This document shows positions 17,636 through 60,252 of a stretch of 64,000 nt of DNA, one piece after another. The notes beneath the pieces are model-generated. The model was given only the letters and a program-made list of their open reading frames with translations. It was not told where the DNA came from and did not search any database. The position numbers and the translations under genes are program-made. Source of the stretch: Octopus sinensis. Taxonomy: Eukaryota. How positions within the stretch are numbered: position 1 is the first letter of the stretch; the number at the start of each line of letters is the position of its first letter. The DNA is taken from NCBI RefSeq assembly GCF_006345805.1, contig NC_043013.1, positions 56,296,001 to 56,360,000 of the forward strand. Reading direction: 5' to 3'.

Positions 17636-18018
17636 CTAGCAGTATCGCTCAGTGTTGCTTGGGTTTGTTTCGACCCTTTAGAATGGGAATTTTTGAAAAG
17701 TAAGAATTTTGCATTATGTCGCTTGTTATTCTCTTTAAGTGTACATTTTTCTGGTTGAATTACACCGAAAAATGACGACACAACAGTCAAAAATCGTAAA
17801 AAATAGGGATTTTTATAGAGAAAAAGCACCTTTTTGATGTAAATAATTTTTGGTGTTAACATGGTCCAATTTGAATTTTTACGGAAAGAAGAGCAAGCCT
17901 TCTTCTATCATACTCTCAATTTTGGTCAACTTGTGCCACAGGGTCTCAGAAGAGATAATGTTAGTTGAATGTTACCAAACCTGCCACACACAGACAACTT
18001 CAGCTTTATATATAGAGA
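17636..18018 (-). mobile_element. Non-autonomous Helitron-like element
   Basis: Minus strand begins A|TCTCTATATATAAAGCTGAAGTTGTCTGTGTG and ends with an imperfect hairpin then CTAG|T (17636-39). Confidence 0.65.
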
Positions 18019-21523: not shown

Positions 21524-21588
<65 letters not shown>

Positions 21589-21805
21589 TCAATTTAGGGT
21601 AGCAAAAAATTCAGTAAAAATTTATCGTTACCAGCGGCCTAATGGAAAAGAGAAAATAGTCAAAGACTAAATATGTATAAATATAACAATTTAGGAATGG
21701 CCTAGACAGGCCATTCGTCCACTAGAAAGAGCAGCCATAACTCCAACCGCCAAGTAGTGTAATTCGGAAATAAGGTGAAAATTTAAAAACATTTACCCTA
21801 ATTCA

Positions 21806-21906
21806 TCTTTTATACGATGCATCGTTTCAGTGTCTTTAATGATAGACCAGCTTAATTAAATTAAATTAAGCTAGTCTACCATAGGTCACACTTCATCAGT
21901 AAAAGA
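21806..21906 (-). ncRNA. Type I hammerhead ribozyme (intact core)
   Basis: Minus strand reads UCUUUUA-CUGAUGA-AGUGU..ACACU-GAA-ACGAUGCAUCGU-A-UAAAAGA: 7-bp stem I, perfectly palindromic stem III, GUA triplet. Confidence 0.88.
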
Positions 21907-22138
21907 AACCTGGGAGAGACGGATATATACGAGGCGACTGTATCAATGCCTCGGGAATATCTGTCTTAAAATTTTCAAGACCAACGCGATAATTTTCTGA
22001 CTAATTCTGAGATTGAATCGGCAGTTTATATTTGCTGCCGATAAGTTTGGCGCGAATGCGTTGGTCTTGAAAATTTTAAGACAGATATTCCCGAGGCATT
22101 GATACAGTCGCCTCGTATATATCCGTCTCTCCCAGGTT

Positions 22139-22238
22139 TCTTTTACTGATGAAGTGTGACCTATGGTAGACTAGCTTAATTTAATTTAATTAAGCTGGTC
22201 TATCATTAAAGACACTGAACGATGCATCGTATAAAAGA
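22139..22238 (+). ncRNA. Type I hammerhead ribozyme (one A missing in GAAAC)
   Basis: TCTTTTA 22139-45, CTGATGA 22146-52, AGTGT/ACACT stem II, GAAC instead of GAAAC at 22217-20, GATGCATC-GTA, TAAAAGA 22232-38. The missing A is either a mutation or a consensus error. Confidence 0.72.
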
Positions 22239-22993
22239 TGAATTAGGGTAAATGTTTTTAAATTTTCACCTTATTTCCGAATTACACTACTTGGCGGTTG
22301 GAGTTATGGCTGCTCTTCTAGTGGACGAATGGCCTGTCTAGGCCATTCCTAATTGTTATATATATATATATATATATATGTAGTGAGAGGTAGATATTTA
22401 TACATACATGCACACATATATGCATGTATATTTATGTATTCTTGAATAAACACCATCCAGCCCATGCAAGCATAGAAAAGTGGACATTAAAATAATGATG
22501 ACGATGAGGAGGAGGAGGAGGACAACTGATGACATTATAATAAAGCACTGTAAATGAGAAAACTCGTAACATGTATGAAATAGACAGAAGCATAGTTATT
22601 CATTTGACATCTTTATAAGATGTGAAGTAAACCTAAATGTAAACAAGTCACAAAGCAAGAATAAAAAAAACAGAGACAGTTAAAGTTAGATGAGAAACGG
22701 TTAGGATGATAATGGAATTGTAGAGATATTGAGAACATTTATGTTTGTGGTGTTTTCTGTGGCTTGTCAGTGGTTAAGGATGATGTGAGGATGATAAATG
22801 TTAGCTGCAATGTGGTATATAACGAAACCCCGTGGGGTGGGTGAATAAATTAAACAATTAGTATATTAATGTATTGCTCATTTTATAAGTATATTCTATA
22901 TATACCTGGGTGGTTCGTCTCTGATAAGGGTTGTTAAAATGAGGTTTTTATTTAAAGGTTTAATATGATCATTGTCTAAACAACGGATATATA

Positions 22994-23636: not shown

Positions 23637-24185
23637 CATACATATATATATATGTACAAATATATACATATACATATGTGTGTGTATGCACATATGTATG
23701 TGTACATATATATGTATATATATATAAATATATATATATATACATTCATACACATATACATATATACTTATGTATTCATACACACACACACACACACGCA
23801 CGCATGCACACATACACACACATCCACACGTCTCTATTTCTATATTTCCCTGTAGGTACATTGGTGTGAAATGATGTTTGCATAGTCTTTTGTCTGTACC
23901 CAGGAGATGGGTAAATACAAACATTTATTCCATATATTTAACCACTTTGGTTTCAGTTTAGCAAACACTTCACATCGATCAAATATGCGGAAAATGGAAT
24001 GTATATGTTGGTAAGCATAAAACATTCTCATTAAAATAATGAAAAACCTTTACCTTTACATGTGTTCAGCTAAAAGGCTTGGATGGTGTTGTGTCGAAAA
24101 TGTATGCTACAAATTTCTTTACTTTAAATGGTGAACAACTAAAACATTGCAGTTCTATATTTAAGAGATCAGCAATTGTGTATGT

Positions 24186-24535
24186 TATTTACATTATTTA
24201 CATTTGATGGATTTTTGTCCTCATCTTGTTTGTTGTTAACACAACGTTTCAGCTGATATACCCTCCAGCCCTCATCAGGTGCCTTGGGGAAATTTTGAAC
24301 CTGGGTTCATGTTCCTAAGGTTAAGAGCATGGGCTACTAATCCCAAGATTCCGAGTCTGATCCCAGGCAGTGACCTGAATAATAATAATGGTAATATAAT
24401 AACAACATCGAGAAATACCTTAGGAATGAGAACCCAGGTTTGATGAAGGCTAGAGGTTATATCAACCAAAATGTTGTGTTAACAACAAACAAGATGAGGA
24501 GAAATATCCGTCAAATGTAAATAACGTAAATAATG
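24186..24535. mobile_element. Older fold-back element with minimal hammerhead-like motif in each arm and a tRNA-like spacer
   Basis: Arms ~24186-24321 and ~24417-24535 (right arm lacks ~20 bp). The spacer contains GGTTAAGAGCATGGGCTACTAATCCCAAGATTCCGAGTCTGATCC, which is tRNA/SINE-head-like. Confidence 0.65.
24238..24283 (-). ncRNA. Degenerate minimal hammerhead-like motif
   Basis: Minus strand reads GGCAC-CUGAUGA-G-GGCUG gagggUAUAU CAGCU-GAA-ACGU-U-GUGUU: stem I with two GU pairs, loop-less palindromic stem III and an extra purine after A9. The right-arm copy is more decayed. Confidence 0.5.
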
Positions 24536-24929
24536 TAGCTAAAATATTGCAAAGTCTATTTTTAATAAACGAAGTTAATTTCTGCCGTTTATTGGAGATA
24601 AATAGGAAAGAATTTCTACCTACTATTCAATTAGGTTAAGTGAAGATTTGTTCAAATGATTCCTATAAGTGATTGCCATGGTAGAACAACAAGGATTCCA
24701 AGCTGTATCTCACAAATGCTTTGGGATGCCTCGTCAGTGACATCACAGAAGCCTTGGAAGATTGTGGGTCTTTCAACTTCAGACCTCCTCTCCCGGTCGA
24801 CCCAGCCAAAGTTATTCAAATTCCAGTTTGCATCCTGGTAGCAGTAAACCATCTCTCTGCTCTCTTTATCCAATTGATCATACATGTTAAGGCTGCTCCT
24901 CCTGGTGAAGTGGATTGGCCTGCAAGAGT

Positions 24930-25165
24930 CATGTACTGGTGCCACATAAAATGCACTCATGGAAGTGCCATGGGAAAGAACTCGTGCAGTGCCATGTAAA
25001 AGCACCCAGTGCACACTTTGTTTGGTGTTAGGAAGGGCATCCAGCCAGAGAAAGCATGCCAAATCAGATTGGAGCCTGGTGCAACCTCCACCTTTCCAGC
25101 TCTGGTCAAACCATCCAACCCCATGCAAGCATGAAGAATGGATGTTAAATGATGATGATGATGAT
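24930..25165 (+). mobile_element. RTE 3'-end fragment
   Basis: TTAGGAAGGGCATCCAGC...CCATGCAAGCATG...GTTAAA(TGA)n. Confidence 0.8.
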
Positions 25166-25890
25166 GTTGGACTGAATGGTGGTGTGCTAGGAAGATTCTT
25201 AATTGGTAAAGTGTGTGAATAACTGGCACTGTCTCTTTGTGCTATTATATATATCATTTATAGTCAGAACAAGAATATTTAAATCCCTTATAGAAGTATT
25301 TATTCAAGATACACTAGTTTAATATATCAAATTTTGAAGAGATAACCGTTCAATGAATATATTATATAAAATATCAAACATTATTGTCGAGTCAGAAAAC
25401 AGAGTTCTAATGGATACAAATTAATTTATTAATTAATAAATTAGTTTGTATCCATTAGATCTCTCTGTTTTCTAACCCAGCTAGCTTTAATCATAACAGG
25501 GCTTTTAAAAAATAATTGTTAATTACAGGTATTCTTTTATTAGTTTCTGATTTAATAAGGATATCTTAGTATTATCTATTAATTTACTGGTATAAGTTTA
25601 ACATAAAAACTTGTAAGAATAAAGAATATTTAATATGTTTGGAGTGTTTTAATTATTAACTTTTGGGCTATGAAATATTGTAATTTACATAGAGTTAGTT
25701 ATAATATTAGTTAAGTTAAGTTCAATTGAGTTTGTTTTGTTTTCGAAAGAATAGAAAATAAAAGCTTTCATTTTTATATTAATAACTATGGAAGACTGGA
25801 CAGAAGATTATTTGTATGGACTTCAAGGGTTAGGTTGCTATTTCGCTAGATAAGTTGGGAGTTAGTTATAGGTTTACTTATAGAATTATT

Positions 25891-28419: not shown

Positions 28420-28798
28420 ACCTGTTGAGGCAAGTGAAATCAAAATCATTAAAAAAATCAATGGAAATTGTAGCTGTGATACCAGTGCCGGTGGCACGTT
28501 AAAAGCACCATCCGAACGTGGCCGTTGCCAGTGACATCTCGACTGGCTTCTGTGCTAGTGGCATGTAAAAAGCACCAACCAATCGTGGCTGTTGCCAGCC
28601 TCGCCTGACACCTGTGCCGGTGGCATGTAAAAAGCACCCACTGCACTCACAGAGTGGTTGGCGTTAGGAAGGGCATCCAGCTGTAGAAACACTGCCAGAT
28701 CAGACTGGAGCCTGGTGCAGCCTCCTGGCTTCCAGACCCCGGTCAAATCGTCCAACTCATGCTAGCATGGAAAACGGGCGTTAAACGATGATGATGAT
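28420..28798 (+). mobile_element. RTE 3'-UTR fragment (longer)
   Basis: GACCTGTTGAGGCAAGTGAAA, GGTGGCAC subunits and the terminal CATGCTAGCATGGAAA..GTTAAACGATGATG. Confidence 0.85.
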
Positions 28799-33296: not shown

Positions 33297-34561
33297 TTAG
33301 GTGGTTCAGAAAGTTCTGAGCATTTTAAACCTAAATATTTAATGCTTGATTGAACACACTGGAAATGTAACACAATAAAACCTTTGGCATTGCTTGGAGT
33401 GGTGGTGCATCTCCTCTTCGTTCCTGACGGAAAATAGATTTAGCTTTCATTTTGGGTACCCTTTATTGACATTTGAAATATCTAAGCAAAAATTCCATAT
33501 TCGTGTTGTGATGTTTTTATTTTTTCAAAAAGGAGAAAATGCTGCAAAGACTTGCAAAAACATTTGTGAAGTTTCTGGTGATGATGATGCTGTAGGTGAA
33601 TCAATTATTCAAAGATGGTTTGCAAAATTTAAAGCTGGAGAGTTTAGCTTAAAGGATGACTGTTACAGTGGAAGACCTTCAAAATTGGAGGAAGATGTTT
33701 TGAAGTCAAAAATCAAAGAAAACACAAGAGAACTTGCAGAGGAGTTGGAAGTTCCTAAAAGTATGGCCCATGAACACCTAATGAAGCAAGGATACATTTA
33801 TCACTATAATGTGTGGGTCTCTCAAAGACTCTCAGAAAAGATTTGCTTGAACCAGTATGACATGCTTTTATGACATGCTCTTGAAATGGAATGAAAGCTT
33901 GCCTTTTTTGAAACAACTTGTGATTGGAGATGTAAAATGGATTGTTTACAAAAACTTAGGGAGAAAAAGATCCTGGAGTTTGCATAAAGATCCTCCGAAG
34001 CAGCAACCAAAGAAGAATATCCTTACCAAAAAGCTATATTTTGTGTTTGGTGGGATCATAAAGGCATTATTTATTATGAGCTTCTCCTACTAATCCAGAC
34101 CATTAATTCGTCAGCTGGCTAATTTGTACCAAAAAATCAAAGAACTGAGGCTGGAGATTGCCAACAGGAAAGGAGTAGTGTTCTGACAAGACAATGCCCA
34201 ACCACATGTGTCTTTGGTTACCCGAACAAAGTCACATGACCTTGGCTGGGATCTCTTACCCCATCCACCATATTCTCCTCATATTGCATCATCCGACTGC
34301 CACTTGTTCTTGTCTCTACAGAACTCATTGCAAGGAAAAACATTTAAAGATTTAGATGGAGTCAAAATGCCTCTATATAACATTTTTTCTTCAAAACCAG
34401 TCAAACTTTATGTGGATGGAATATTGAAATTGCCTGATAGATGGGCAAAAGTCATTAATAATAATGTAAATTATTTCATTCAATAAAATTTATTGAAAGG
34501 TCAGTTATTTATATCCCTTTTACCATATTAAAAAACACTCAGAACTTTCTGGACAACCTAA
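33297..34561 (+). mobile_element. Decayed mariner (DD34D) DNA transposon
   Basis: TIRs TTAGGTGGTTCAGAAAGTTCTGAG / CTCAGAACTTTCTGGACAACCTAA with TA on the left. ORF fragments QRWFAKFKAGEFSL..SGRP, WVSQRL (WVPHEL-like), IGDVKW, HPPYSPHIASSD (YSPDLAPSD-like); stops and frameshifts. Confidence 0.93.
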
Positions 34562-46267: not shown

Positions 46268-46448
46268 CCTTGCCTTCCTTTGCTTTTCTTCCATGAACAC
46301 CTAAAGGCCTTAAACCAATACCACCCCTTCTATATATGGTGGTGACCATACGGCGCAAAAACATGTTAGTGCAGTGTAACAGGTTGAACTTAAGTTCATT
46401 GCTTTGCTTATGAATTCTGCCAAATGCGAGTTTTCTTCTTCTTTTCAG

Positions 46449-49400
46449 GTACATGACGGCACTGCTCCCCGTCCCTGGGCCTCTCGGGTCAATTCCTTCC
46501 ACCCCCTCAGGGTGGGCACCCTCAACGCTGGCACACTGAAAGGTAGGTCTGGCGAGATAGTCGAGATGCTTGAACGGAGACGTGTTGACGTATGTTGTAT
46601 GCAAGAAATAAGGTGGAGAGGAGGATCTGCTAGGTTCCTCGCAGGCAAGGAACACAGGTACAAGATTTTCTGGGCAGGGAACACTGACGGGGTTGGTGGC
46701 GTGGGTATACTTATCGCTGAGAAATGGATAGATAGAGTAATTGAGGTAATCAGAGTAAGTGACAGAATACTTAAGATTAGAATAGTGCTTCATCATAGAT
46801 TAGCAACCATTATATCGGCCTATGCCCCTCAGCCAGGGCTACCCGATGGACAGAAAGACAGTTTCTATGACACCCTACTGCAGACCACCTCATTGACGAA
46901 CGACAGGGACCTTCTCTTTGTGGCTGGTGATTTCAATGGGCATGTTGGACGACATGCTGGGGGCTTCCATGGCGTGCATGGAGGCTACGGTTATGGTTCC
47001 CGCAACGAGGAGGGAACCAGGCTGCTGGAGTTCTGCGATGCGAATAGTCTTATGATCTGCAACACTAACTTCAGGAAACCAACAAGCCACCTGGTCACCT
47101 ACCGATCGGGCCGGCATGCTAGCCAAATCGCCAGAAAAAGGGAAAGATGGCTGCTTATAAATGCCAAAACCTTCCCGGGCGAAGAATGCACCCCACAACA
47201 TAGACTGGTAGTTAGTGACTTTAGGATCAGGACTAAGAGGGCGACTAGAAGACGACCAACATGGAGAAGAAGGGTCTGGAAGCTTAAAGACCCTGCGAAT
47301 GGACAGAGATTTAGAGATATGTTACTTGAAGCCTTTGACGAAGTGGAAGGGGGTATAGCTACACATGGGGTAGAAGACAACTGGACGTTTCTGAGGGACA
47401 ACCTGCTGAAAGCCGCTGACCAGATCTGTGGCTGGTGCAAAGTCCCCTTAAGACCCAAAATAACATGGTGGTGGAACAATATTGTTGATAGGGCTATTAG
47501 ACAAAAGAAACAGGCTTGGAAGGCCTGGAAGAACGGTGGTAGCAGGGAAGTGTATCAGACTGCCAGAAGGGAAGCTAGGAGACAGGTCTATCTAGCCAGA
47601 GGGGAAGCAGATAAAAGAAAATTTGCCAATGTCCTGCGCCGTGAGGATGAAAGACTTGAGGTATTTCGTGTTGCAAGACAGTGTGTGAGAGAGAATCGAG
47701 ATGTGGTAGGAGAGAAATGTGTTCGCATGGAGGATGGTTCACTTGCGTTAAATGAGGATGCAAAGAGAGAAGCTTGGAGACGCCACTATGAAAGGTTGCT
47801 GAATGAGGAAAATGAATGGGATAAAGAGAGTCTGCCGAATGTTGACCCAACAGAGGGACCAGCTATCCGAGTTGATAGTTCCGTGGTAGCTAAGGCAATT
47901 AGAAGCATGAAGACAGGGAAAGCCCAGGCCCATCAGGAATTACTGCAGAGATGCTCAAAATATCTGGTAGTGTCGGCTATAGCATAGTCACCCGTATAGT
48001 TAACCAGGTGATACACGAAGGAGTCATACCCAATGACTGGTGTAGCAGCATAATAGTCAACTGCTACAAAGGTAAAGGCGATGCCCTAGATACAAATAAC
48101 TACAGGGGCATCAAGCTGTTGGATCAGGAAATGAAGGTTACGGAGAGGGTTATAGCCCAGTTAATTAGAGAGAGAGTTACCTTAGATGATATGCAGTTTG
48201 GGTTCGTGCCAGGGAAAAGTACTACTGATGCTATATTCCTGGTAAGACAGCTGCAGGAGAAATACCTAGCCAAAGGTAAGCCCTTGTACCTGGCTTTTGT
48301 TGACTTAGAGAAAGCCTTTGACAGGGTCCCCCGATCCCTTATCTGGTGGTCAATGAGGAAACTAGGGATAGATGAATGGTTAGTGAGAGCTGTGCGAGCC
48401 ATGTACAGAGACGCAGCTAGTAAGGTGAGGGTTGGCAACGAGTACAGTGAAGAATTCCGGGTAGAGGTTGGGGTCCACCAAGGTTCAGTCCTCAGCCCCC
48501 TTCTATTTATCATAGTCCTCCAGGCAATAACGGAAGAATTTAAGACAGGATGCCCCTGGGAGCTCCTATATGCTGATGACCTTGCTCTAATTGCTGAGTC
48601 ACTATCAGAACTGGAGGAGAAGTTTCAGGTGTGGAAACAAGGATTAGAATCGAAGGGCCTTAGAATCAACCTAGCCAAAACCAAAGTCCTAATAAGTAGG
48701 AAGGTGGACCAACCACAAACGACTTCAGGTAGATGGCCCTGCTCGATCTGTAAAAAGGTGTAGGTAGAAACTCTATAAGGTGCACCAAGTGTAAGCTATG
48801 GACACATAAGAGGTGCAGCAATGTCAAAGGAAGGCTAACTAAGAAAATTTTTTGTCTGTGGCAGATGCTCAGGAGAAATAAACACTGGAAATGTGCAGAG
48901 TCCAACTTCTACCACGTTCCAGGGAGACAAACTAGAAGTAGTTGATAGCTTCCGCTACCTAGGAGACCAAGTCAGTAGCGGGGGTGGGTGTGCTGAAAGT
49001 GTAACTGCTAGAGTAAGAATAGCCTGGGCAAAGTTTAGAGAGCTCTTACCCCTGCTGGTGACAAAGGTCTCTCGCTAAGAGTAAAAGGCAGACTATATGA
49101 TGCGTGTGTACGTACAGCCATGCTACATGGTAGTGAAACATGGGCCGTGACAGCTGAGGATATGCGTAAGCTTGCAAGAAATGAAGCCAGTATGCTCCGA
49201 TGGATGTGTAATGTCAGTGTTCATAATCGTCAGAGTGTAAGTACTTTGAGAGAAAAGTTGAACCTAAGAAGTGTCAGTTGTGGTGTGCAAGAGAGACGGC
49301 TGCGCTTATGGTCATGTGACGAGAATGGCTGAAGATAGTTGTGTGCAAAAGTGCTACAACCTAGCAGTTGAGGGAACCTGTGGAAGAGGTAGACCCAGGA

Positions 49401-49515: not shown

Positions 49516-52005
49516 TCAGGCCATATCCCGTGGCCCCTACCTGGGACGTAGTCGATCCACCTGTGCATACCTTCCTCCTTGTGACACTTGTGAAGACCTG
49601 CTGAGGCAAGTGAAAATCAATCAAAATAGATGAACATCAATGGGAATTTGTATCTTTGTGTGGTACCAGTGCCTGTGGCACACAAGAAACCATCCGAACA
49701 GTGGCCGTAGCCAGTACCGCACGCATCGACTGGCCTCCGTGCTGTGGGAACATGGTGGCACATAAAAACACCATCCGAAGACCCGGCAAGACTAGTCAGG
49801 TCATAACCCGTGGGCCCTACCTGGGACGTAGTCAGTCCCACCTGTACATACCTTCCGACTTGTGAAGACCTGCTGAGGCAAGTGAAAATCAAATCAAATC
49901 AAAACAAATCAAAATAGATGAACATCAATGGAATTTGTATCCTTGTTGTACCAGTGCCAGTGGCACACAAGAATCCATCCGAACGTGGCCGTAGTCCAGT
50001 ACCGCTTGTGGTACCAGTGCCGGTGGCACACAAGAATCCATCCGAACGTGGCCGTAGTCAGTACCGCTTGTGGTACCAGTGCCGGTGGCACACAAGAATC
50101 CATCCGATCGTGGCCGTAGTCAGTACCGCATCACTGGCCATCGTGCTGTGGGCACATAACAAACACCATCCGGTCGTGGCCGTTCGCCAGCCTCATCTAG
50201 CACCTGTGTCGGTGGCACATAAAAAGTAGTCAGTACCGCTTGTGGTACCAGTGCCGGTGGCACACAAGAATCCATCCGAACATGGCTGTGTAGTCAGTAC
50301 CGCATCACTGGCCATCGTGCTGTGGGCACATAACAAACACATCCGGTCGTGGCCGTTCGCCAGCCTCATCTAGCACCTGTGTCGGTGGCACATAAAAACA
50401 CCTTCCGAAGACCCGGCAAGACTAGTCAGGCCATAAACCATGGCCCCTACCTGGGACGTAGTCAGTCCACCTGTGCATACTTCCTCCTTGTGATACTTGT
50501 GAAGGCCTGTTGAGGCAAGTGAAAATCAAAGGCCTGTTGAGGCAAGTGAAAATCAAAGGCCTGTTGAGGCAAGTGAAAATCAAATCAAAATCAAATCAAA
50601 ACTAATCAAAATAGATGAACATCAATGGAATTTGTATCTTTGTGGTACCAGTGCCGGTGGCACACAAGAGAAAACCATCCGAAAGTGGCCGTAGCCAGTA
50701 CCGCATCGACTGGCCTCCGTTCTGTGGGCACATGACAAACACCATCCGATCGTGGCCGTTCGCCAGCCTCATCTAGCACCTGTGTCGGTGGCACATAAAA
50801 ACACCATCCGAAGACCCGGCAAGACTAGTCAGGCCATAACCCATGGCCCCTACCTGGGACGTAGTCAGTCCACCTGTGCATACCTTCCTTCTTGTGACAC
50901 TTGTGAAGACCTGTTGAGGCAAGTGAAAATCAAATCAAAACAAATCAAAATAGATGAACATCAATGGAATCTGTATCTTTGTGGTACCAGTGCCGGTGGC
51001 ACACATGAGAACCATCCGAACGTGGCCGTAGCCAGTTCCGCATCGACCGGCCTCCGTGCTGTGGGCACGTAACAAACACCATCCGATCATGGCCGTTCGC
51101 CAGCCTCATCTGGCACCTGTGTCGGTGGCACATAAAAACACCTTCCGAAGACCCGGCAAGACTAGTCAGTCCACCTGTGCATACCTTCCTTCCTTCTTGT
51201 GACACTTGTGAAGACCGGTTGAGGCAAGTGAAAATCAAATCAAAATAGACAAAATAGATGAACATCAATGGAATTTGTATCTTGTGGTACCAGTGCCTGT
51301 GGCACACACAAGAATCCATCAGTGCCGTAGTCAGTGCGGTGGGCACATGACAAACACCATCCGATCGTGGCCGTTCGCCAGCCTCATCTAGCACCTGTGT
51401 CGGTGGCACATAAAAACACCATCCGAAGACCCGGCAAGACTAGTCAGGCCATAACCCATGGCCCCTACTGGGACGTAGTCAGTCCACCTGTGCATACCTT
51501 CCTTCTTGTGACACTTGTGAAGACCTGCTGAGGCAAGTGAAAATCAAATCAAAACAAATCAAAATAGATGAACATCAATGGAATTTGTATCTTTGTGGTA
51601 CCAGTGCCGGTGACACGTGGCACATAAGAAAACCATCCGAACGTGGCCGTAGCGCACAGTACCGCATCGACTGGCCTCCGTGCTGTGGGCACGTAACAAG
51701 CACCATCCGATCGTGGCCGTTTGCCAGCCTCATCTGGCACCTGTGTCGGTGGCACATAAAAACACCATCCGAGCGTGGCCGTCTGCCAGCCTCGTCTGGC
51801 ACCTGTGTGGTGGCACATAAAAACACCATCCGAGCGTGGCCGTCTGCCAGCCTCGTCTGGCACCTGTGTCGGTGGCACATAAAAACACCATCCGAGCGTG
51901 GCGTCTGCCAGCCTCGTCTGGCACCTGTGTCGGTGGCACATAAAAACACCATCCGAGCGTGCCGTTTGTCAGCCTCGTCTGGCACCTGTGTCGGTGGCAC
52001 ATAAA
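49501..52005 (+). repeat. Hierarchical tandem array in the LINE 3' UTR
   Basis: Large units of ~280-630 bp start at ACCCGGCA(A/G)GACTAG near 49501, 49781, 50411, 50814, 51151 and 51429. ~55-60-bp subunits (GGCACATAAAAACACCATCCGA..) occur throughout and in tandem at 51750-52005. GGCCTGTTGAGGCAAGTGAAAATCAAA occurs x3 at ~50505-50585. Confidence 0.9.
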
Positions 52006-53402
52006 AAATCACCACTACACTCTCGGAGTGGTTGGCGTTAGGAAGGGCATCCAGCTGTAGAAACACTGCCAGATCTGACTGGACTGGTGCAGCTTTCGGG
52101 CTCCCCAGACCCCAGTTGAACCGTCCAACCCATGCTAGCATGGAAAGTGGACGTTAAATGATGATGATGATGATGATGATCACTTCTTTTTATATTTTTC
52201 ACTACAATTCACCACAAGAAAAAATTTCAGTTTTTCCTATTGAACTTATATAAATATCAATATATAAACCAGATTTCATTGAATAGTTGTCTGCTTGTTT
52301 TTAATGTTTGGTGGTTTGTTTTCATGCTGTTTATTCTTTGTTTTATTTTGATGTTCCTTACGTGGATTATACAGGTTCTTAGGCAAAATACCTAATCCCA
52401 AGTGGAGTTAGTAGTTATTGGATTAAATATAATTTTATTCGTATAATCCATAAGAAATTATAGTTTAGCATGGTCACGTTGCCATTTTAAGGCTGATTAT
52501 ATTACAACAATATTGACTGATCTCTTTGACACATGCTACAAAATATTTTCCCAACACTTCTGTTTTCTACATGGCAGATGATCCACATCATATTTTTTCT
52601 TTTATGGAACCCTACAACTGCACAGATTTTTATTACTTAACCATTTCTTTCCATGTATCACTTCCAACAGAATCACATTGACATTTTTATTCTTTTATAA
52701 AAATACATTTCGTCAGAAGAGATGGGTCAGTGTTTCAGATATCAGAAGTTTTCTGAACTAACACTAAAAATTCATTAATGAAACTGAAACTGAAAGTAAA
52801 ATACATTAATTAGTTTATCGTGAAATGTTGAACAACGTATACAATGTCAAACCTTCATTAAAAGCAGCTATACCTTTGTGATTTTCCCCAGATGTGGGAA
52901 GTGACAAAGATATATATTTACATGTAGAAAGGTATATATATTTATATATACAAAGATATATATTTATAAAAGAACATCAAGTGCAGTTTATTAAAGAATT
53001 GAATTTTAATATGGAGAAAAACTGTATCATTCAGGGTCCCTTGAAGGTATGGAAATAACTTGTTTGCATAATGTATAGTCAGTATAATGTATATTGCTTA
53101 TTGGGAAGAATTCTAATCAAAGTATTATTATTTTGTTTCATGTGAAATTTGGTGAAGAAATTAATATTAGAGAATGGACAAATATAATGGCATTGAAAAT
53201 AATAGAATTTCTCTGTCTGAGTTTGGATATAAATATATTGCAATCTATTGACTGACTGATTGATACAGGTATCATATGTGAGTATGCTTAACAGTAATAG
53301 CAATGAGCAGTGTGTCAGTGGGAAGCAGTAACATGTTTGCATGTATGTATGCATGTATATGTGTGTGTGTGTATGCATGCATGAATATATGTACGTGTGG
53401 GA

Positions 53403-54603: not shown

Positions 54604-54803
54604 TATATATATATGTATGTATATATGTATATATATATATATATATTATATATACATATGCATATGCCCTGCTCGCTTAGCAAGCGGGGAGGCATCATTT
54701 GAATGCTAAAACAAAGCGAAGCGCATTGTGACAACGATGTGTAGCAACATCTAATAGCCTGGTCGGTCACGGTGATCACGGTGATATATATATATATATA
54801 TAC

Positions 54804-54852
<49 letters not shown>

Positions 54853-54867
54853 TATATATATATACAC

Positions 54868-54909
<42 letters not shown>

Positions 54910-54926
54910 TATATATATATATATAA

Positions 54927-54973
<47 letters not shown>

Positions 54974-55203
54974 ATTAATCAATATAGGGTGTCAAAAAAA
55001 AAAAATTTTGTAGAATTTTTTTGCCACCAGCGGCCTAGTGGGAAAAAATTAAATAGTCATAGACCATTTTTAAGTTCAACATCAACAATCAAGGAACGGC
55101 CATAATAGGCTATTCACCCACTAGAAATAACAGCCAAAGCTTCAACCGCAAATAAAAATCAATTCCGTAAACAGGAGAAAATTTAAAAAACATTTACCCT
55201 ATA

Positions 55204-55310
55204 ATTTCTTATACGATGCACCGTTTCATCTGCTGTTTAATGGTAAACTAACCTGATTAAATTAAATCAAGCTAATCTTCCATAGGCCCTCAGATTCTTC
55301 AGTAAGAAAT
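55204..55310 (-). ncRNA. Type I hammerhead ribozyme, array copy 1
   Basis: Minus strand reads AUUUCUUA-CUGAAGA-AUCUG..(long hairpin)..CAGAU-GAA-ACG GUGCAU CGU-A-UAAGAAAU: 8-bp stem I, intact core, GUA cleavage triplet (A at 55212). Confidence 0.88.
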
Positions 55311-55698
55311 AGCCCAAGTCGGAACAGATATTTTCACGAGGCATTTCCGACCCTGCCAAGGTAATATCTGACCTAAAATTTTCAAATCATCGCACTCGCG
55401 CCAAATTTATCGGCAGCAAATAAATATAAGCCGTCGATTCCATTACGGAATTAACCAGAAAATTCATAATTAATCAATATAGGGTGGCAAAAAAAAAAAA
55501 TTTTGTAGAATTTTTTTGCCACCAGCGGCCTAGTGGGAAAAAATTAAATAGTCATAGACCATTTTTAAGTTCAACATCAACAATCAAGGAACGGCCATAA
55601 TAGGCTATTCACCCACTAGAAATAACAGCCAAAGCTTCAACCGCAAATAAAAATCAATTCCGTAAACAGGAGAAAATTTAAAAAACATTTACCCTGTA

Positions 55699-55805
55699 AT
55701 TTCTTATACGATGCACCGTTTCATCTGCTGTTTAATGGTAAACTAACCTGATTAAATTAAATCAAGCTAATCTTCCATAGGCCCTCAGATTCTTCAGTAA
55801 GAAAT
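55699..55805 (-). ncRNA. Type I hammerhead ribozyme, array copy 2
   Basis: Same motif as copy 1, 495 bp away; cleavage A at 55707. Confidence 0.88.
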
Positions 55806-56085
55806 AGCCCAAGTCGGAACAGATATTTTCACGAGGCATTTCCGACCCTGCCAAGGTAATATCTGACCTAAAATTTTCAAATCATCGCACTCGCGCCAAA
55901 TTTATCGGCAGCAAATAAATATAAGCCGTCGATTCCATTACGGAATTAACCAGAAAATTCATAATTAATCAATATAGGGTGGCAAAAAAATTTGGCGCGA
56001 GTGCGATGATTTGAAAATTTTAGGTCAGATATTACCTTGGCAGAGTCGGAAATGCCTCGTGAAAATATCTGTTCCGACTTGGGCT

Positions 56086-56192
56086 ATTTCTTACTGAAGA
56101 ATCTGAGGGCCTATGGAAGATTAGCTTGATTTAATTTAATCAGGTTAGTTTACCATTAAACAGCAGATGAAACGGTGCATCGTATAAGAAAT
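56086..56192 (+). ncRNA. Type I hammerhead ribozyme, array copy 3
   Basis: Stem I ATTTCTTA 56086-93 / TAAGAAAT 56185-92; core CTGAAGA 56094-100; stem II ATCTG 56101-05 / CAGAT 56164-68; GAAAC 56169-73; stem III ACG..CGT; GTA with cleavage after 56184. Confidence 0.9.
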
Positions 56193-56578
56193 TACAGGGT
56201 AAATGTTTTTTAAATTTTCTCCTGTTTACGGAATTGATTTTTATTTGCGGTTGAAGCTTTGGTTGTTATTTCTAGTGGGTGAATAGCCTATTATGGCCGT
56301 TCCTTGATTGTGATGTTGAACTTAAAAATGGTCTATGACTATTTAATTTTTTCCCACTAGGCCGCTGGTGGCAAAAAAATTCTACAAAATTTTTTTTTTT
56401 TGCCACCCTATATTGATTAATTATGAATTTTCTGGTTAATTCCGTAATGGAATCGACGGCTTATATTTATTTGCTGCCGATAAATTTGGCGCGAGTGCGA
56501 TGATTTGAAAATTTTAGGTCAGATATTACTTGGCAGGGTCGGAAATGCCTCGTGAAAATATCTGTTCCGACTTGGGCT

Positions 56579-56685
56579 ATTTCTTACTGAAGAATCTGAG
56601 GGCCTATGGAAGATTAGCTTGATTTAATTTAATCAGGTTAGTTTACCATTAAACAGCAGATGAAACGGTGCATCGTATAAGAAAT
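56579..56685 (+). ncRNA. Type I hammerhead ribozyme, array copy 4
   Basis: Identical motif; predicted cleavage after 56677. Confidence 0.88.
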
Positions 56686-57076
56686 TACAGGGTAAATGTT
56701 TTTTAAATTTTCTCCTGTTTACGGAATTGATTTTTATTTGCGGTTGAAGCTTTGGCTGTTATTTCTAGTGGGTGAATAGCCTATTATGGCCGTTCCTTGA
56801 TTGTTGATGTTGAACTTAAAAATGGTCTATGACTATTTAATTTTTTCCCACTAGGCCGCCGGTGGCAAAAAAATTCTACAAAATTTTTTTTTTTTTTTTG
56901 CCACCCTATATTGATTAATTATGAATTTTCTGGTTAATTCCGTAATGGAATCGACGGCTTATATTTATTTGCTGCCGATAAATTTGGCGCGAGTGCGATG
57001 ATTTGAAAATTTTAGGTCAGATATTACCTTGGCAGTGTCGGAATGCCTCGTGAAAATATCTGTTCCGACTTGGGCT

Positions 57077-57185
57077 ATTTCTTACTGAAGAATCTGAGGG
57101 CCTATGGAAGATTAGCTTGATTTAATTTAATCAGGTTAGTTTACCATTAAACAGCAGAGATGAAACGGTGCATCGTATAAGAAAT
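57077..57185 (+). ncRNA. Type I hammerhead ribozyme, array copy 5
   Basis: Same motif with a 2-nt AG insertion on the 3' side of stem II (ATCT/AGAT still pairs); predicted cleavage after 57177. Confidence 0.82.
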
Positions 57186-57304
57186 TACAGGGTAAATGTT
57201 TTTTAAATTTTCTCCTGTTTACGGAATTGATTTTTATTTGCGGTTGAAGCTTTGGCTGTTATTTCTAGTGGGTGAATAGCCTATTATGGCCGTTCCTTGA
57301 TTGT

Positions 57305-57344
<40 letters not shown>

Positions 57345-60152: not shown

Positions 60153-60252
60153 NNNNNNNNNNNNNNNNNNNNNNNNNNNNNNNNNNNNNNNNNNNNNNNN
60201 NNNNNNNNNNNNNNNNNNNNNNNNNNNNNNNNNNNNNNNNNNNNNNNNNNNN
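60153..60252. other. Assembly gap (100 N)
   Basis: Run of N. Confidence 1.

What the first reader, a model, noticed from the sequence alone, without database searches (positions are those of the whole stretch)
54975..57307. Retrozyme-like array: 495-bp non-coding monomer with one intact type I hammerhead ribozyme per unit
Seen: five copies of AUUUCUUA-CUGAAGA-AUCUG..CAGAU-GAAACG GUGCAU CGUA-UAAGAAAU, two on the minus strand and three on the plus strand. Predicted cleavage sites are 495 nt apart on minus and 493 and 500 nt apart on plus, and the monomer has no ORF. Established: this is the type I HHR consensus (CUGANGA, GAAA, NUH), and metazoan non-LTR retrozymes are tandem repeats with type I HHRs whose transcripts self-cleave into monomers that circularise. 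Inference: this is a cephalopod retrozyme or Penelope-dependent element making ~495-nt linear or circular RNAs, longer than the roughly 170-400 nt usually reported. I cannot tell whether this family has already been described.
Basis: partly seen in the sequence, partly recalled or inferred. Interest (0 to 1): 0.93.

Follow-up and report, generated by a model that had tools for sequence, protein, structure and literature searches.

The report
Self-cleaving-RNA retroelement inserted in (TA)n repeats
This is a non-coding mobile element whose roughly 495-base repeat carries a hammerhead self-cleaving RNA motif; it belongs to a known class (animal "retrozymes") but is an apparently undescribed family, probably from an octopus-like genome, and the way it is inserted matches Penelope-like retrotransposons.

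Summary
There are five type I hammerhead (HHR) motifs, one per ~495-bp non-coding unit, at the stated cleavage sites.

Between the two elements the catalytic core differs only at the free position N7. Of 36 base pairs, 7 changed on both sides and 7 on one side while staying paired; only one was lost. Neutral drift would break 10-13. The ribozyme fold has therefore been under selection.

Helix III is very weak as a hairpin but forms a 12-bp self-duplex, so a double-hammerhead probably does the cleaving. Helix II carries an insert of about 60 nt, and no Rfam hammerhead model detects the motif.

Both loci have the same build: two arms head-to-head, outer ends at the same two unit positions, directly abutting (AT)n, with non-homologous flanks. 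This fits independent retrotransposition by twin priming into (TA)n, the pattern published for Penelope-like elements.

The 495-nt size is not unusual; published retrozymes span 51-972 bp. Transcription, circular RNA and the autonomous partner are untested.

Verdict: a new member of a known kind, of moderate interest.

The parts
54784..54973 (.). (AT)n-rich microsatellite directly abutting the left end of element A
   Evidence: TRF period 2, 95 copies; sequence; perfect AT run 54951-54973
54971..55990 (-). Element A, arm whose hammerhead sense is the minus strand: unit positions 212->495, one full unit, then 1->241/246. Its sense 3' end points outward (left).
55204..55310 (-). Hammerhead copy 1; predicted cleavage between 55212 and 55211
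55699..55805 (-). Hammerhead copy 2; predicted cleavage between 55707 and 55706
55988..55990 (.). Head-to-head junction of the two arms of A (unit position 212 of one arm meets 299 of the other), with AAA/AAATTT microhomology. The hairpin it creates produces the spurious Rfam MIR5070 hit at 55852-56039.
55988..57308 (+). Element A, arm whose hammerhead sense is the plus strand: unit positions 299->495, two full units, then 1->131. Its sense 3' end points outward (right).
56086..56192 (+). Hammerhead copy 3; predicted cleavage after 56184
56579..56685 (+). Hammerhead copy 4; predicted cleavage after 56677
57077..57185 (+). Hammerhead copy 5; predicted cleavage after 57177. A 2-nt insertion (within 57156-57159) weakens the base of helix II to 4 bp.
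57307..57343 (.). (AT)n directly abutting the right end of element A
21528..21585 (.). (AT)n directly abutting the left end of element B
21586..21990 (-). Element B (same family, about 70-73% identical to A), minus-sense arm: unit positions ~312->495->243
21805..21907 (-). Intact hammerhead of element B (UUCUUUUA-CUGAUGA-AGUGU...ACACU-GAAA-CGAUGCAUCG-UA|UAAAAGAU); predicted cleavage between 21813 and 21812
21989..22357 (+). Element B, plus-sense arm: unit positions ~244/247->495->~131. It is 99% identical to the other arm of B.
22138..22239 (+). Hammerhead of B's plus-sense arm with a broken core (GAAA -> GAA, one A deleted)
22357..22379 (.). (AT)n directly abutting the right end of element B

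Best explanation
Elements A (54971-57308) and B (21586-22357) are two independent insertions of one family of non-autonomous, non-coding retroelements of the animal non-LTR retrozyme kind.

Shown:
- Each ~495-nt unit encodes a type I hammerhead with the full catalytic core (CUGANGA / GAAA / A15.1-U16.1 / GUA|).
- Helix I is 7-8 bp. Helix II is unusually long: 5 bp, an internal loop, then a 19-bp stem. Helix III is very short.
- The 12 nt spanning helix III, ACG(G/A)UGCAUCGU, are self-complementary.
- The fold has been kept by selection across about 30% sequence divergence.
- Each locus consists of two arms joined head-to-head, with their sense 3' ends pointing outward into (AT)n.

Inferred mechanism:
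1. The array is transcribed as a multimer.
2. Two neighbouring hammerheads pair through the helix III palindrome into a double hammerhead and cut after GUA, releasing ~495-nt monomers with 5'-OH and 2',3'-cyclic phosphate ends.
3. A host RNA ligase circularises the monomers.
4. A circular or uncleaved multimeric RNA is then copied into DNA by the reverse transcriptase and GIY-YIG endonuclease of an autonomous Penelope-like element that nicks (TA)n.
5. One target strand primes at unit position ~131 (..UUGAUUGUUGAU). The other strand primes at the similar AU-rich site at ~243-246 (..UUGAUUAAUUAU). This is twin priming.
6. The result is a multi-unit direct arm plus an inverted arm, both 5'-truncated, joined at the centre by microhomology.
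For: Core and helices are present in all copies. Chance expectation is below about 0.01 per window, with 0 of 300 simulations giving a hit.

A versus B: overall identity is 70.5%, yet the core differs only at N7. Of 36 pairs, 97% of cells are paired, 7 pairs changed on both sides, 7 changed on one side and stayed paired, and 1 was lost. With partners slid by 1-3 columns only 31-42% of cells pair and 0-1 pairs show double changes. A neutral simulation predicts 10-13 broken pairs, and none of 20,000 runs gave <=1.

Helix III as a hairpin has dG -0.2 / -1.0 kcal/mol, against -17.5 / -18.7 for the self-duplex. This is the architecture known to act as a dimer in newt satellite and Penelope-like-element hammerheads (PMC4209133; PMC7229834).

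The monomer is highly self-paired (-138.9 kcal/mol, z = -4.8). Outside the hammerhead it has helices conserved between A and B (107 consensus pairs, 9 compensatory). It is non-coding and has 35% GC.

The insertions are independent: flanks beyond the (AT)n are not homologous, the arms within each element are 99-100% identical while A and B differ by about 30%, and the inner truncation points differ (A: 212 and 299; B: ~312 and ~245).

The outer ends coincide in A and B (~131 and ~243-246), and all four abut (AT)n, which covers only 2.6% of the window as perfect runs. In B the outer end of one arm and the inner start of the other are contiguous in unit coordinates, as twin priming predicts. No arm ends at the hammerhead cut site, so the template was a circle or a multimer.

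The literature describes Penelope-like insertions as partial head-to-tail tandems plus an adjacent inverted 5'-truncated copy, with (TA)n as the preferred target in several clades. [quoted passage not shown] Vertebrate retrozymes are related to the terminal repeats of Penelope-like elements.
Against: - No Rfam hammerhead model matches.
- The 10.1-11.1 pair is A-U in both elements rather than the nearly universal G-C. From my own knowledge, this may lower activity.
- Minimum-free-energy folds do not form helix III.
- There is no evidence here for transcription, cleavage or circles.
- No Penelope-like ORF was found among 28 window ORFs scanned, and no partner sequence is available to compare 3' ends.
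- Only two insertions were seen, so the regularity of the ends rests on n = 2.
- In A the two arms are not contiguous; there is a 52-nt gap.
- A DNA-level inversion with one breakpoint in the (AT)n flank would give the same geometry.
- The (AT)n could be a tail made by the reverse transcriptase rather than the target.
- One hammerhead of B is core-dead and one of A is weakened.
- No further copy was retrieved from any public collection I could reach.
Confidence: 0.72

Rival explanations
1. This is a hammerhead-bearing tandem (satellite-type) DNA that spreads and rearranges only at the DNA level. Unit number changes by unequal exchange. The head-to-head form arose by an inversion between the self-complementary (AT)n flank and an internal AT-rich site. 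Copies move between (AT)n tracts by ectopic repair. The ribozyme only processes transcripts, as proposed for newt satellite 2 or cricket pDo500.
For: Both elements have the same outer ends and the same left/right orientation, as a copied cassette would. (AT)n is self-complementary and recombination-prone. An inversion predicts the contiguity seen in B. Differences at the centre could come from deletions at the centre of a palindrome. Hammerhead satellites of about 500 bp are known (PMC2837043).
Against: The arrays are tiny (2.1 + 2.7 units; under 1 unit per arm in B), unlike satellites. The two loci have unrelated flanks and different inner junctions. Within each locus the arms are 99-100% identical while the loci differ by about 30%, which suits separate young insertions of two subfamilies. 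Fixed 3' ends with variable 5' truncation are the hallmark of target-primed reverse transcription. Tandem plus inverted copies in (TA)n is the published Penelope-like insertion pattern (PMC8557442).
Confidence: 0.13
2. This is a SINE-like element mobilised by a LINE rather than by a Penelope-like element, comparable to Schistosoma Sm-alpha. The hammerhead is a passenger.
For: A LINE with endonuclease and reverse-transcriptase domains lies at 46380-48760 in the same window. Twin priming is best documented for LINE-1 (my own knowledge).
Against: There is no tRNA-like or Pol III-type head and no poly(A) or LINE-like tail. The unit has no similarity to the LINE or to anything else in the window. 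Multicopy head-to-tail insertion is not a SINE feature.
Confidence: 0.06
3. These are remnants of the terminal repeats (pLTRs) of an autonomous Penelope-like element that has lost its ORF, not a dedicated non-autonomous family.
For: Hammerheads of Penelope-like elements sit in the pLTRs, and retrozymes are phylogenetically close to pLTRs.
Against: Five consecutive complete or partial units have no ORF remnant between them. The same ORF-less unit is found in a second, diverged locus. The hammerhead has a canonical-type helix III loop and a long helix I, unlike the minimal hammerheads of Penelope-like elements.
Confidence: 0.05
4. The motif is a chance resemblance, or the palindromic arrangement is an assembly artefact.
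For: No Rfam hit. Palindromic joins can be produced by long-read chimeras. An N gap lies at 60153-60252.
Against: 0 of 300 simulated windows contain the motif. Compensatory changes separate two loci. The centres are asymmetric, differ between the two loci, and both loci are embedded in unique flanks.
Confidence: 0.02

Closest known systems
Metazoan non-LTR retrozymes (Cervera & de la Pena 2020, PMC7229834; Li, Clavereau & Pollet 2026 preprint, 10.64898/2026.07.22.740005)
   Same: Short head-to-tail repeats of a few hundred bp. They are non-coding and low in GC (35%), with one type I hammerhead per unit and a highly self-paired monomer. They lack LTRs, a primer binding site and a polypurine tract. 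Several loci occur per genome. A mollusc example is known (Mytilus).
   Different: No cephalopod family turned up in the searchable literature. Helix II carries an insert of about 60 nt, so the motif spans about 107 nt and escapes Rfam. The 10.1-11.1 pair is A-U. Each locus is a head-to-head pair of arms set in (AT)n, an arrangement the retrozyme papers I read do not describe. RNA circles have not been shown here.
Penelope-like elements: insertion architecture and hammerheads in the terminal repeats (Craig et al. 2021, PMC8557442; Cervera & de la Pena 2014, PMC4209133)
   Same: Partial head-to-tail tandems, an adjacent inverted 5'-truncated copy, (TA)n as preferred target, and hammerheads built to act as dimers through a palindromic helix III.
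   Different: There is no RT/GIY-YIG ORF, so the element is non-autonomous. The hammerhead is not the minimal type: it has an 8-bp helix I, a helix III loop, and no bulged base before helix II. The Naiad elements reported in Octopus lack canonical hammerheads, so the partner clade is unknown.
Hammerhead satellites: newt satellite 2 and Dolichopoda pDo500 (PMC2837043)
   Same: The unit size is about the same as pDo500 (463-505 bp). Cleavage is proposed to occur through a double hammerhead. Compensatory changes keep the stems.
   Different: Those are large arrays making up percent-level fractions of the genome. Here there are small dispersed insertions with retrotransposition-type ends.
LINE-1 twin priming
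   Same: The arms are inverted and 5'-truncated, with both sense 3' ends facing the flanks. The inner junction shows microhomology, and the two arms are contiguous or nearly so on the template.
   Different: The template here is a multimeric or circular non-coding RNA. The target is a (TA)n microsatellite and there is no poly(A).

Membership tests
Hammerhead ribozyme, type I | Conserved core: C3 U4 G5 A6 N7 G8 A9, G12 A13 A14, A15.1-U16.1, and cleavage after a non-G H17 | tested here: met
   CUGAAGA/CUGAUGA, GAAA and GUA| are present in 5 copies of A and 1 of B. The second copy in B has GAA instead of GAAA.
Hammerhead ribozyme, type I | Three helices around the core, with helix I open-ended (type I topology) | tested here: met
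   Helix I 8/7 bp, helix II 5 + 19 bp, helix III 3-4 bp
Hammerhead ribozyme, type I | Helices supported by covariation between diverged copies | tested here: met
   7 double and 7 single pair-preserving changes and 1 loss in 36 pairs. Slid controls give 31-42% of cells paired. The neutral expectation is 10-13 losses. Only two independent sequences were available.
Hammerhead ribozyme, type I | G10.1-C11.1 pair at the base of helix II (near-universal but not absolute) | tested here: not met
   A-U in both A and B
Hammerhead ribozyme, type I | Match to the Rfam hammerhead covariance models (a detection criterion, not a definition) | tested here: not met
   No hit at gathering score or at E<=10, including on 141-nt slices. 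The cause is probably the ~60-nt helix II insert; this is my inference.
Hammerhead ribozyme, type I | Self-cleavage giving 5'-OH and 2',3'-cyclic phosphate ends | not testable with these tools
   Needs in vitro transcription of a dimeric construct
Metazoan non-LTR retrozyme | Head-to-tail repeats of about 150-1000 bp, each with one type I hammerhead; no LTR, primer binding site or polypurine tract; non-coding; GC below 50% | tested here: met
Metazoan non-LTR retrozyme | Dispersed copies at unrelated loci | tested here: met
   Two loci 33 kb apart with non-homologous flanks. The genome-wide copy number is unknown.
Metazoan non-LTR retrozyme | Expressed as linear and circular monomer RNA | not testable with these tools
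   No transcript data were reachable. ORF-based look-ups in public assemblies found nothing.
Metazoan non-LTR retrozyme | Co-occurrence with autonomous Penelope-like elements in the same genome | tested here: inconclusive
   None of 28 window ORFs has a Penelope-like RT or GIY-YIG match, but 64 kb is far too little. The literature reports such elements in Octopus species.
Penelope-like-element-type insertion | Partial head-to-tail tandem plus adjacent inverted 5'-truncated copy | tested here: met
   Both A and B
Penelope-like-element-type insertion | Insertion into a (TA)n microsatellite | tested here: met
   All four outer ends abut perfect AT runs, which cover 2.6% of the window. Whether the (AT)n is the target or an added tail is not resolved.
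Penelope-like-element-type insertion | 3' end shared with an autonomous partner | not testable with these tools
   No cephalopod repeat library or whole genome could be searched
Hammerhead satellite DNA (newt satellite 2, pDo500) | Long homogeneous arrays of many units | tested here: not met
   2.1 + 2.7 units in A; less than one unit per arm in B

The most novel reading that the evidence does not exclude
The two loci are direct genomic footprints of how animal retrozymes integrate. A circular or multimeric hammerhead RNA is reverse-transcribed from two defined internal AU-rich sites (UUGAUUNNUNAU) by twin priming on both strands of a nicked (TA)n tract. That would tie retrozyme mobility mechanistically to (TA)n-targeting Penelope-like endonucleases. 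In addition, this hammerhead variant (extended helix II, A10.1-U11.1) may represent a sizeable class of cephalopod ribozymes that current Rfam-based annotation cannot see.
Probability: 0.3. Interest if true: 0.65.

Novelty: new member of a known kind. Interest (0 to 1): 0.5.

Why it matters
Retrozymes are proposed to move through small circular RNAs using the machinery of Penelope-like elements, but the published support is mostly co-occurrence and sequence relatedness. Here the insertion geometry carries mechanistic information. The 3' ends are fixed and are not the ribozyme cut site. The 5' ends are variable. The arms are head-to-head, contiguous in B and 52 nt apart in A. The flanks are (TA)n. 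A genome-wide census of this family could test the twin-priming and circular-template model directly. The case also shows that a hammerhead under clear selection can be missed entirely by Rfam because of a long helix II insert, so counts such as the 235 hammerheads reported for the giant squid are probably underestimates. The class itself (tandem hammerhead retroelements in animals, including molluscs) is well established, so this extends a known picture and does not change it.

Tried and rejected
1. Rfam: whole window at gathering score, the region at E<=10, and two 141-nt slices. No hammerhead hit. The MIR5070 hit at 55852-56039 (E = 4e-10, below gathering) is just the hairpin made by the inverted junction. 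The other miRNA hits are (AT)n or the helix II hairpin.
2. Pattern GAAACGRTGCATCGTATAA in metagenome contigs gave 3 hits, all chance (a CRISPR array and two coding regions, with no CUGANGA upstream). Viral contigs gave 0 hits.
3. I tried to reach other copies through the protein indexes: exact look-up of the 38-aa and 30-aa unit ORFs, and a homology search with the 56-aa stop-free stretch. Nothing was found.
4. 31 kb of Octopus vulgaris chromosome OX597839.1, fetched through a LINE homologue, contained no copy and no hammerhead.
5. Segmental duplication of A and B is rejected because the flanks are not homologous.
6. A tRNA-derived SINE head is rejected because ARAGORN finds none.
7. Similarity of the unit to the nearby LINE or to anything else in the window: none.
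8. A Penelope-like ORF in the window: none among the 28 ORFs scanned. I did not scan all six frames.
9. The claim that the size is exceptional is rejected from the literature.
Full report

Yes. Tandem Repeats Finder reports two adjoining arrays: 54971-55990 (period 495, 2.1 copies, 99% matches) and 55988-57308 (period 493, 2.7 copies, 98%). At most 0.02 occurrences are expected by chance.

The predicted cleavage sites are after 56184, 56677 and 57177 on plus, and at 55212|55211 and 55707|55706 on minus.

No ORF in the array exceeds 44 aa. The longest stop-free stretch in any frame of the tandem unit is 56 aa.

I wrote a hammerhead descriptor requiring CUGANGA, helix II of at least 4 bp, GAAA, helix III of at least 2 bp, UH, and helix I of at least 5 bp. 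It found nothing in 300 simulated 64-kb windows generated with the window's own dinucleotide frequencies. It found six hits in the real window.

The fifth copy (57077-57185) has a 2-nt insertion in the 3' strand of helix II, so "one intact hammerhead per unit" holds for four of the five copies.

**2.

The sixth descriptor hit lies at 21805-21907 on the minus strand. It belongs to a second element, B (21586-22357). BLAST aligns B to the unit of A at 72-75% identity, and a global alignment gives 70.5%. BLAST with either element as query finds no further copies in the window.

The sequences beyond the flanking (AT)n tracts of A and B are not homologous. The two arms of B are 99% identical to each other, and the arms of A are 99-100% identical. 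A and B are therefore separate, fairly young insertions of two diverged subfamilies and not a segmental duplication.

**3. Is the hammerhead real?**

B makes a comparative test possible. In a structure-guided alignment, the catalytic core differs between A and B only at N7 (A versus U), the one core position that is free to vary.

The fate of the 36 base pairs (helices I, II and III plus A15.1-U16.1) was as follows:

| Outcome | Pairs |
|---|---|
| Unchanged | 20 |
| Changed on one side, still paired | 7 |
| Changed on both sides, still paired | 7 |
| Mismatch in A that becomes a pair in B | 1 |
| Pair lost (the outermost pair of helix I) | 1 |

Four of the five pairs at the base of helix II changed on both sides.

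When the 3' partners are slid by 1-3 columns, only 31-42% of cells pair and 0-1 pairs show double changes. The true register gives 97% and 7.

I simulated neutral divergence at the observed 29.5% per site. It breaks 10-13 pairs on average, and none of 20,000 runs broke one or fewer.

The opposite is observed, although only two independent sequences were available.

**4. Anatomy of the ribozyme**

- Helix I is AUUUCUUA/UAAGAAAU (8 bp; 7 bp in B).
- Helix II has a 5-bp base, then an internal loop (7x7 nt in A, 5x5 in B), then a 19-bp stem capped by the invariant loop UAAUUU. The whole motif therefore spans about 107 nt.
- This long helix II is the likely reason that no Rfam hammerhead model scores, even at E<=10 on 141-nt slices. 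That explanation is my inference.
- The 10.1-11.1 pair is A-U in both elements, whereas G-C is usual.
- Helix III is only A-U, C-G, G-C and G.U (A-U in B) around a UGCA loop. As a hairpin it is worth -0.2 kcal/mol in A and -1.0 in B.
- The 12-nt stretch ACG(G/A)UGCAUCGU is self-complementary. As a duplex between two copies it is worth -17.5 kcal/mol in A and -18.7 in B.
- The single change in this stretch in B turns the G.U into A-U and makes the palindrome perfect.

A weak helix III capped by a palindromic loop is the design described for most metazoan type I hammerheads and for those of Penelope-like elements. In those, two ribozymes on a multimeric transcript form one active double hammerhead, while the monomeric circle stays uncut (PMC4209133; PMC7229834).

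**5. The rest of the unit**

The unit has 35% GC and is non-coding. It folds to -138.9 kcal/mol with z = -4.8 against shuffles. RNAalifold on A plus a composite B monomer recovers the three ribozyme helices and several further helices. In total there are 107 consensus pairs, 9 of them compensatory. This matches the "highly self-paired" monomers described for retrozymes (PMC7229834).

**6. Architecture of the insertions**

I number the unit from the nucleotide after the cut site.

| Element | Left arm (minus-sense) | Right arm (plus-sense) |
|---|---|---|
| A | 212->495, one full unit, 1->241/246 | 299->495, two full units, 1->131 |
| B | ~312->495->243 | ~244/247->495->~131 |

In both elements:
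- The arms meet head-to-head, with their sense 5' ends at the centre.
- The sense 3' ends face outward.
- The outer ends fall at the same two unit positions.
- All four outer ends run directly into (AT)n. Perfect AT runs of 12 bp or more cover only 2.6% of the window.
- The inner 5' truncation points differ between A and B.

Both outer sites lie 12 nt into a TTGATT motif: A has UUGAUUGUUGAU| at one site and UUGAUUAAUUAU| at the other.

In B, the outer end of one arm (243) and the inner start of the other (~244-247) are contiguous on the unit. In A they are 52 nt apart.

No arm ends at the ribozyme cut site (495|1). The template was therefore not a linear, ribozyme-processed monomer. It was a circle or an uncleaved multimer.

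**7. Mechanism, and which steps are inferred**

Fixed 3' ends with variable 5' truncation are the signature of target-primed reverse transcription. Two arms with their 3' ends outward, joined at the centre by microhomology and (nearly) contiguous on the template, are the geometry of twin priming.

Published descriptions of Penelope-like elements match three features seen here: partial head-to-tail tandems, an adjacent inverted 5'-truncated copy, and preferential insertion into (TA)n in the clades with a CX2-5CxxC linker (Naiad, Hydra and others). Non-autonomous derivatives are reported to make multicopy head-to-tail insertions. Octopus species are listed as hosts of Naiads, and Hydra-clade elements occur in molluscs (PMC8557442). 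A 2026 preprint relates vertebrate retrozymes to the terminal repeats of Penelope-like elements.

My best explanation is therefore a retrozyme family mobilised by a (TA)n-targeting Penelope-like element, with the following steps:
1. Transcription of the array as a multimer.
2. Cleavage by a double hammerhead.
3. Ligation of monomers into circles.
4. Twin-primed reverse transcription.

All four steps are inferred from anatomy and literature. What is shown here is the motif, the selection on its fold, the independence of the two loci, and the geometry of the insertions.

**8. Rivals**

- *DNA-level history* (small satellite, an inversion between the self-complementary (AT)n flank and an internal AT-rich site, spread by ectopic repair). 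This would also give identical outer ends and the contiguity in B. I cannot exclude it with two loci. The tiny arrays, unrelated flanks, different centres and young arms argue against it.
- *A LINE-dependent SINE-like element.* This is unlikely. There is no tRNA-like head, no A-tail, and no similarity to the LINE at 46380-48760.
- *A decayed autonomous Penelope-like element.* This is unlikely because five units follow each other without any ORF remnant.
- *Chance or assembly artefact.* This is contradicted.

**9. Comparison with what is known, and novelty**

The class is known. Non-LTR retrozymes are reported from cnidarians to amphibians, including a mollusc, Mytilus (PMC7229834).

The unit size is unremarkable. 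Repeats of 150-450 bp and circular RNAs from 150 to more than 1000 nt are reported. Consensus lengths range from 51 to 972 bp. The pDo500 hammerhead satellite is 463-505 bp.

For cephalopods, the only mention I found is a count of 235 Rfam Hammerhead_1 hits in the giant squid genome (PMC6962438). I found no paper describing a cephalopod retrozyme. That search covers open-access papers and bioRxiv only.

The origin of the window is not certain. Its LINE has its best named relatives in Octopus vulgaris and O. bimaculoides among others. Repeats in the window share 72-82% DNA identity with O. vulgaris chromosome OX597839.1. That fits an octopod but does not identify the species.

What is new here:
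- The family itself.
- The long helix II, which hides the motif from Rfam.
- The conserved A10.1-U11.1 pair.
- The twin-arm, (TA)n-flanked insertion geometry with recurrent ends.

I rate this a new member of a known kind, with interest about 0.5.

**10. Limits**

- No public collection I could reach holds cephalopod genomes in searchable form. The metagenome and viral scans, the ORF look-ups, one protein search and 31 kb of O. vulgaris all yielded no further copy.
- Copy number, expression, circularity, catalytic activity and the autonomous partner all remain open.
- The regularity of the insertion ends rests on two events.

Noticed in passing
window 24185-24533 (motif on minus strand; CUGAUGA at 24278-24272, predicted cut near 24243): A third, unrelated inverted pair. 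The arms 24185-24277 and 24441-24533 are 88% complementary. One arm matches the minimal hammerhead described for Penelope-like elements: a bulged G before a 6-bp helix II, GAAACGUU with no helix III loop, and a 5-bp helix I. The partner arm is degenerate (AAAA in place of GAAA). That descriptor gave 0 hits in 300 simulated windows, but the minimum-free-energy fold does not favour the motif (z = -0.7), and 10.1-11.1 would be G.U. It may be a remnant related to a Penelope-like element, or a chance match inside a foldback repeat.
   Followed up: partly
window 46380-48760 (+): A LINE-type retrotransposon. One ORF has an Exo_endo_phos endonuclease domain (E = 6.5e-8), followed by a separate ORF with RVT_1 (E = 1.2e-33), so the reading frame is interrupted near 47950-47990. 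The best database relative is 64% identical. Named relatives include Octopus vulgaris and O. bimaculoides proteins.
   Followed up: partly
window 33379-33870 (+): An ORF with the HTH_48 domain of Mos1/mariner transposases (E = 1.6e-15), probably a mariner-type transposon remnant.
   Followed up: no
window 28477-28638, 49942-50398, 51688-52007: Three minisatellites with 61-67-bp units (also read as 123 or 172 bp). Their consensus units look related, all containing ..GGTGGCAC(A/G)T/A..AA..CACC/ATCC..A(A/G)CGTGGCCGT... They may be arrays derived from one interspersed repeat.
   Followed up: no
window 60153-60252: A run of exactly 100 N, which is a scaffold gap in the source assembly.
   Followed up: no
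window 54660-54783: A 124-bp non-repetitive, GC-richer fragment sandwiched between two (AT)n tracts just left of element A. It may be another small insertion into the same microsatellite.
   Followed up: no
window 17675-17982; also 22440-22500 and 25100-25170: The stretch at 17675-17982 is an interspersed repeat 82% identical over 337 bp to Octopus vulgaris chromosome OX597839.1. Separately, a short motif (..CATGCTTGCATGGG(C/G)TGGATGG..) recurs near element B and inside the 201-aa ORF at 24655-25257, which has no Pfam match.
   Followed up: no
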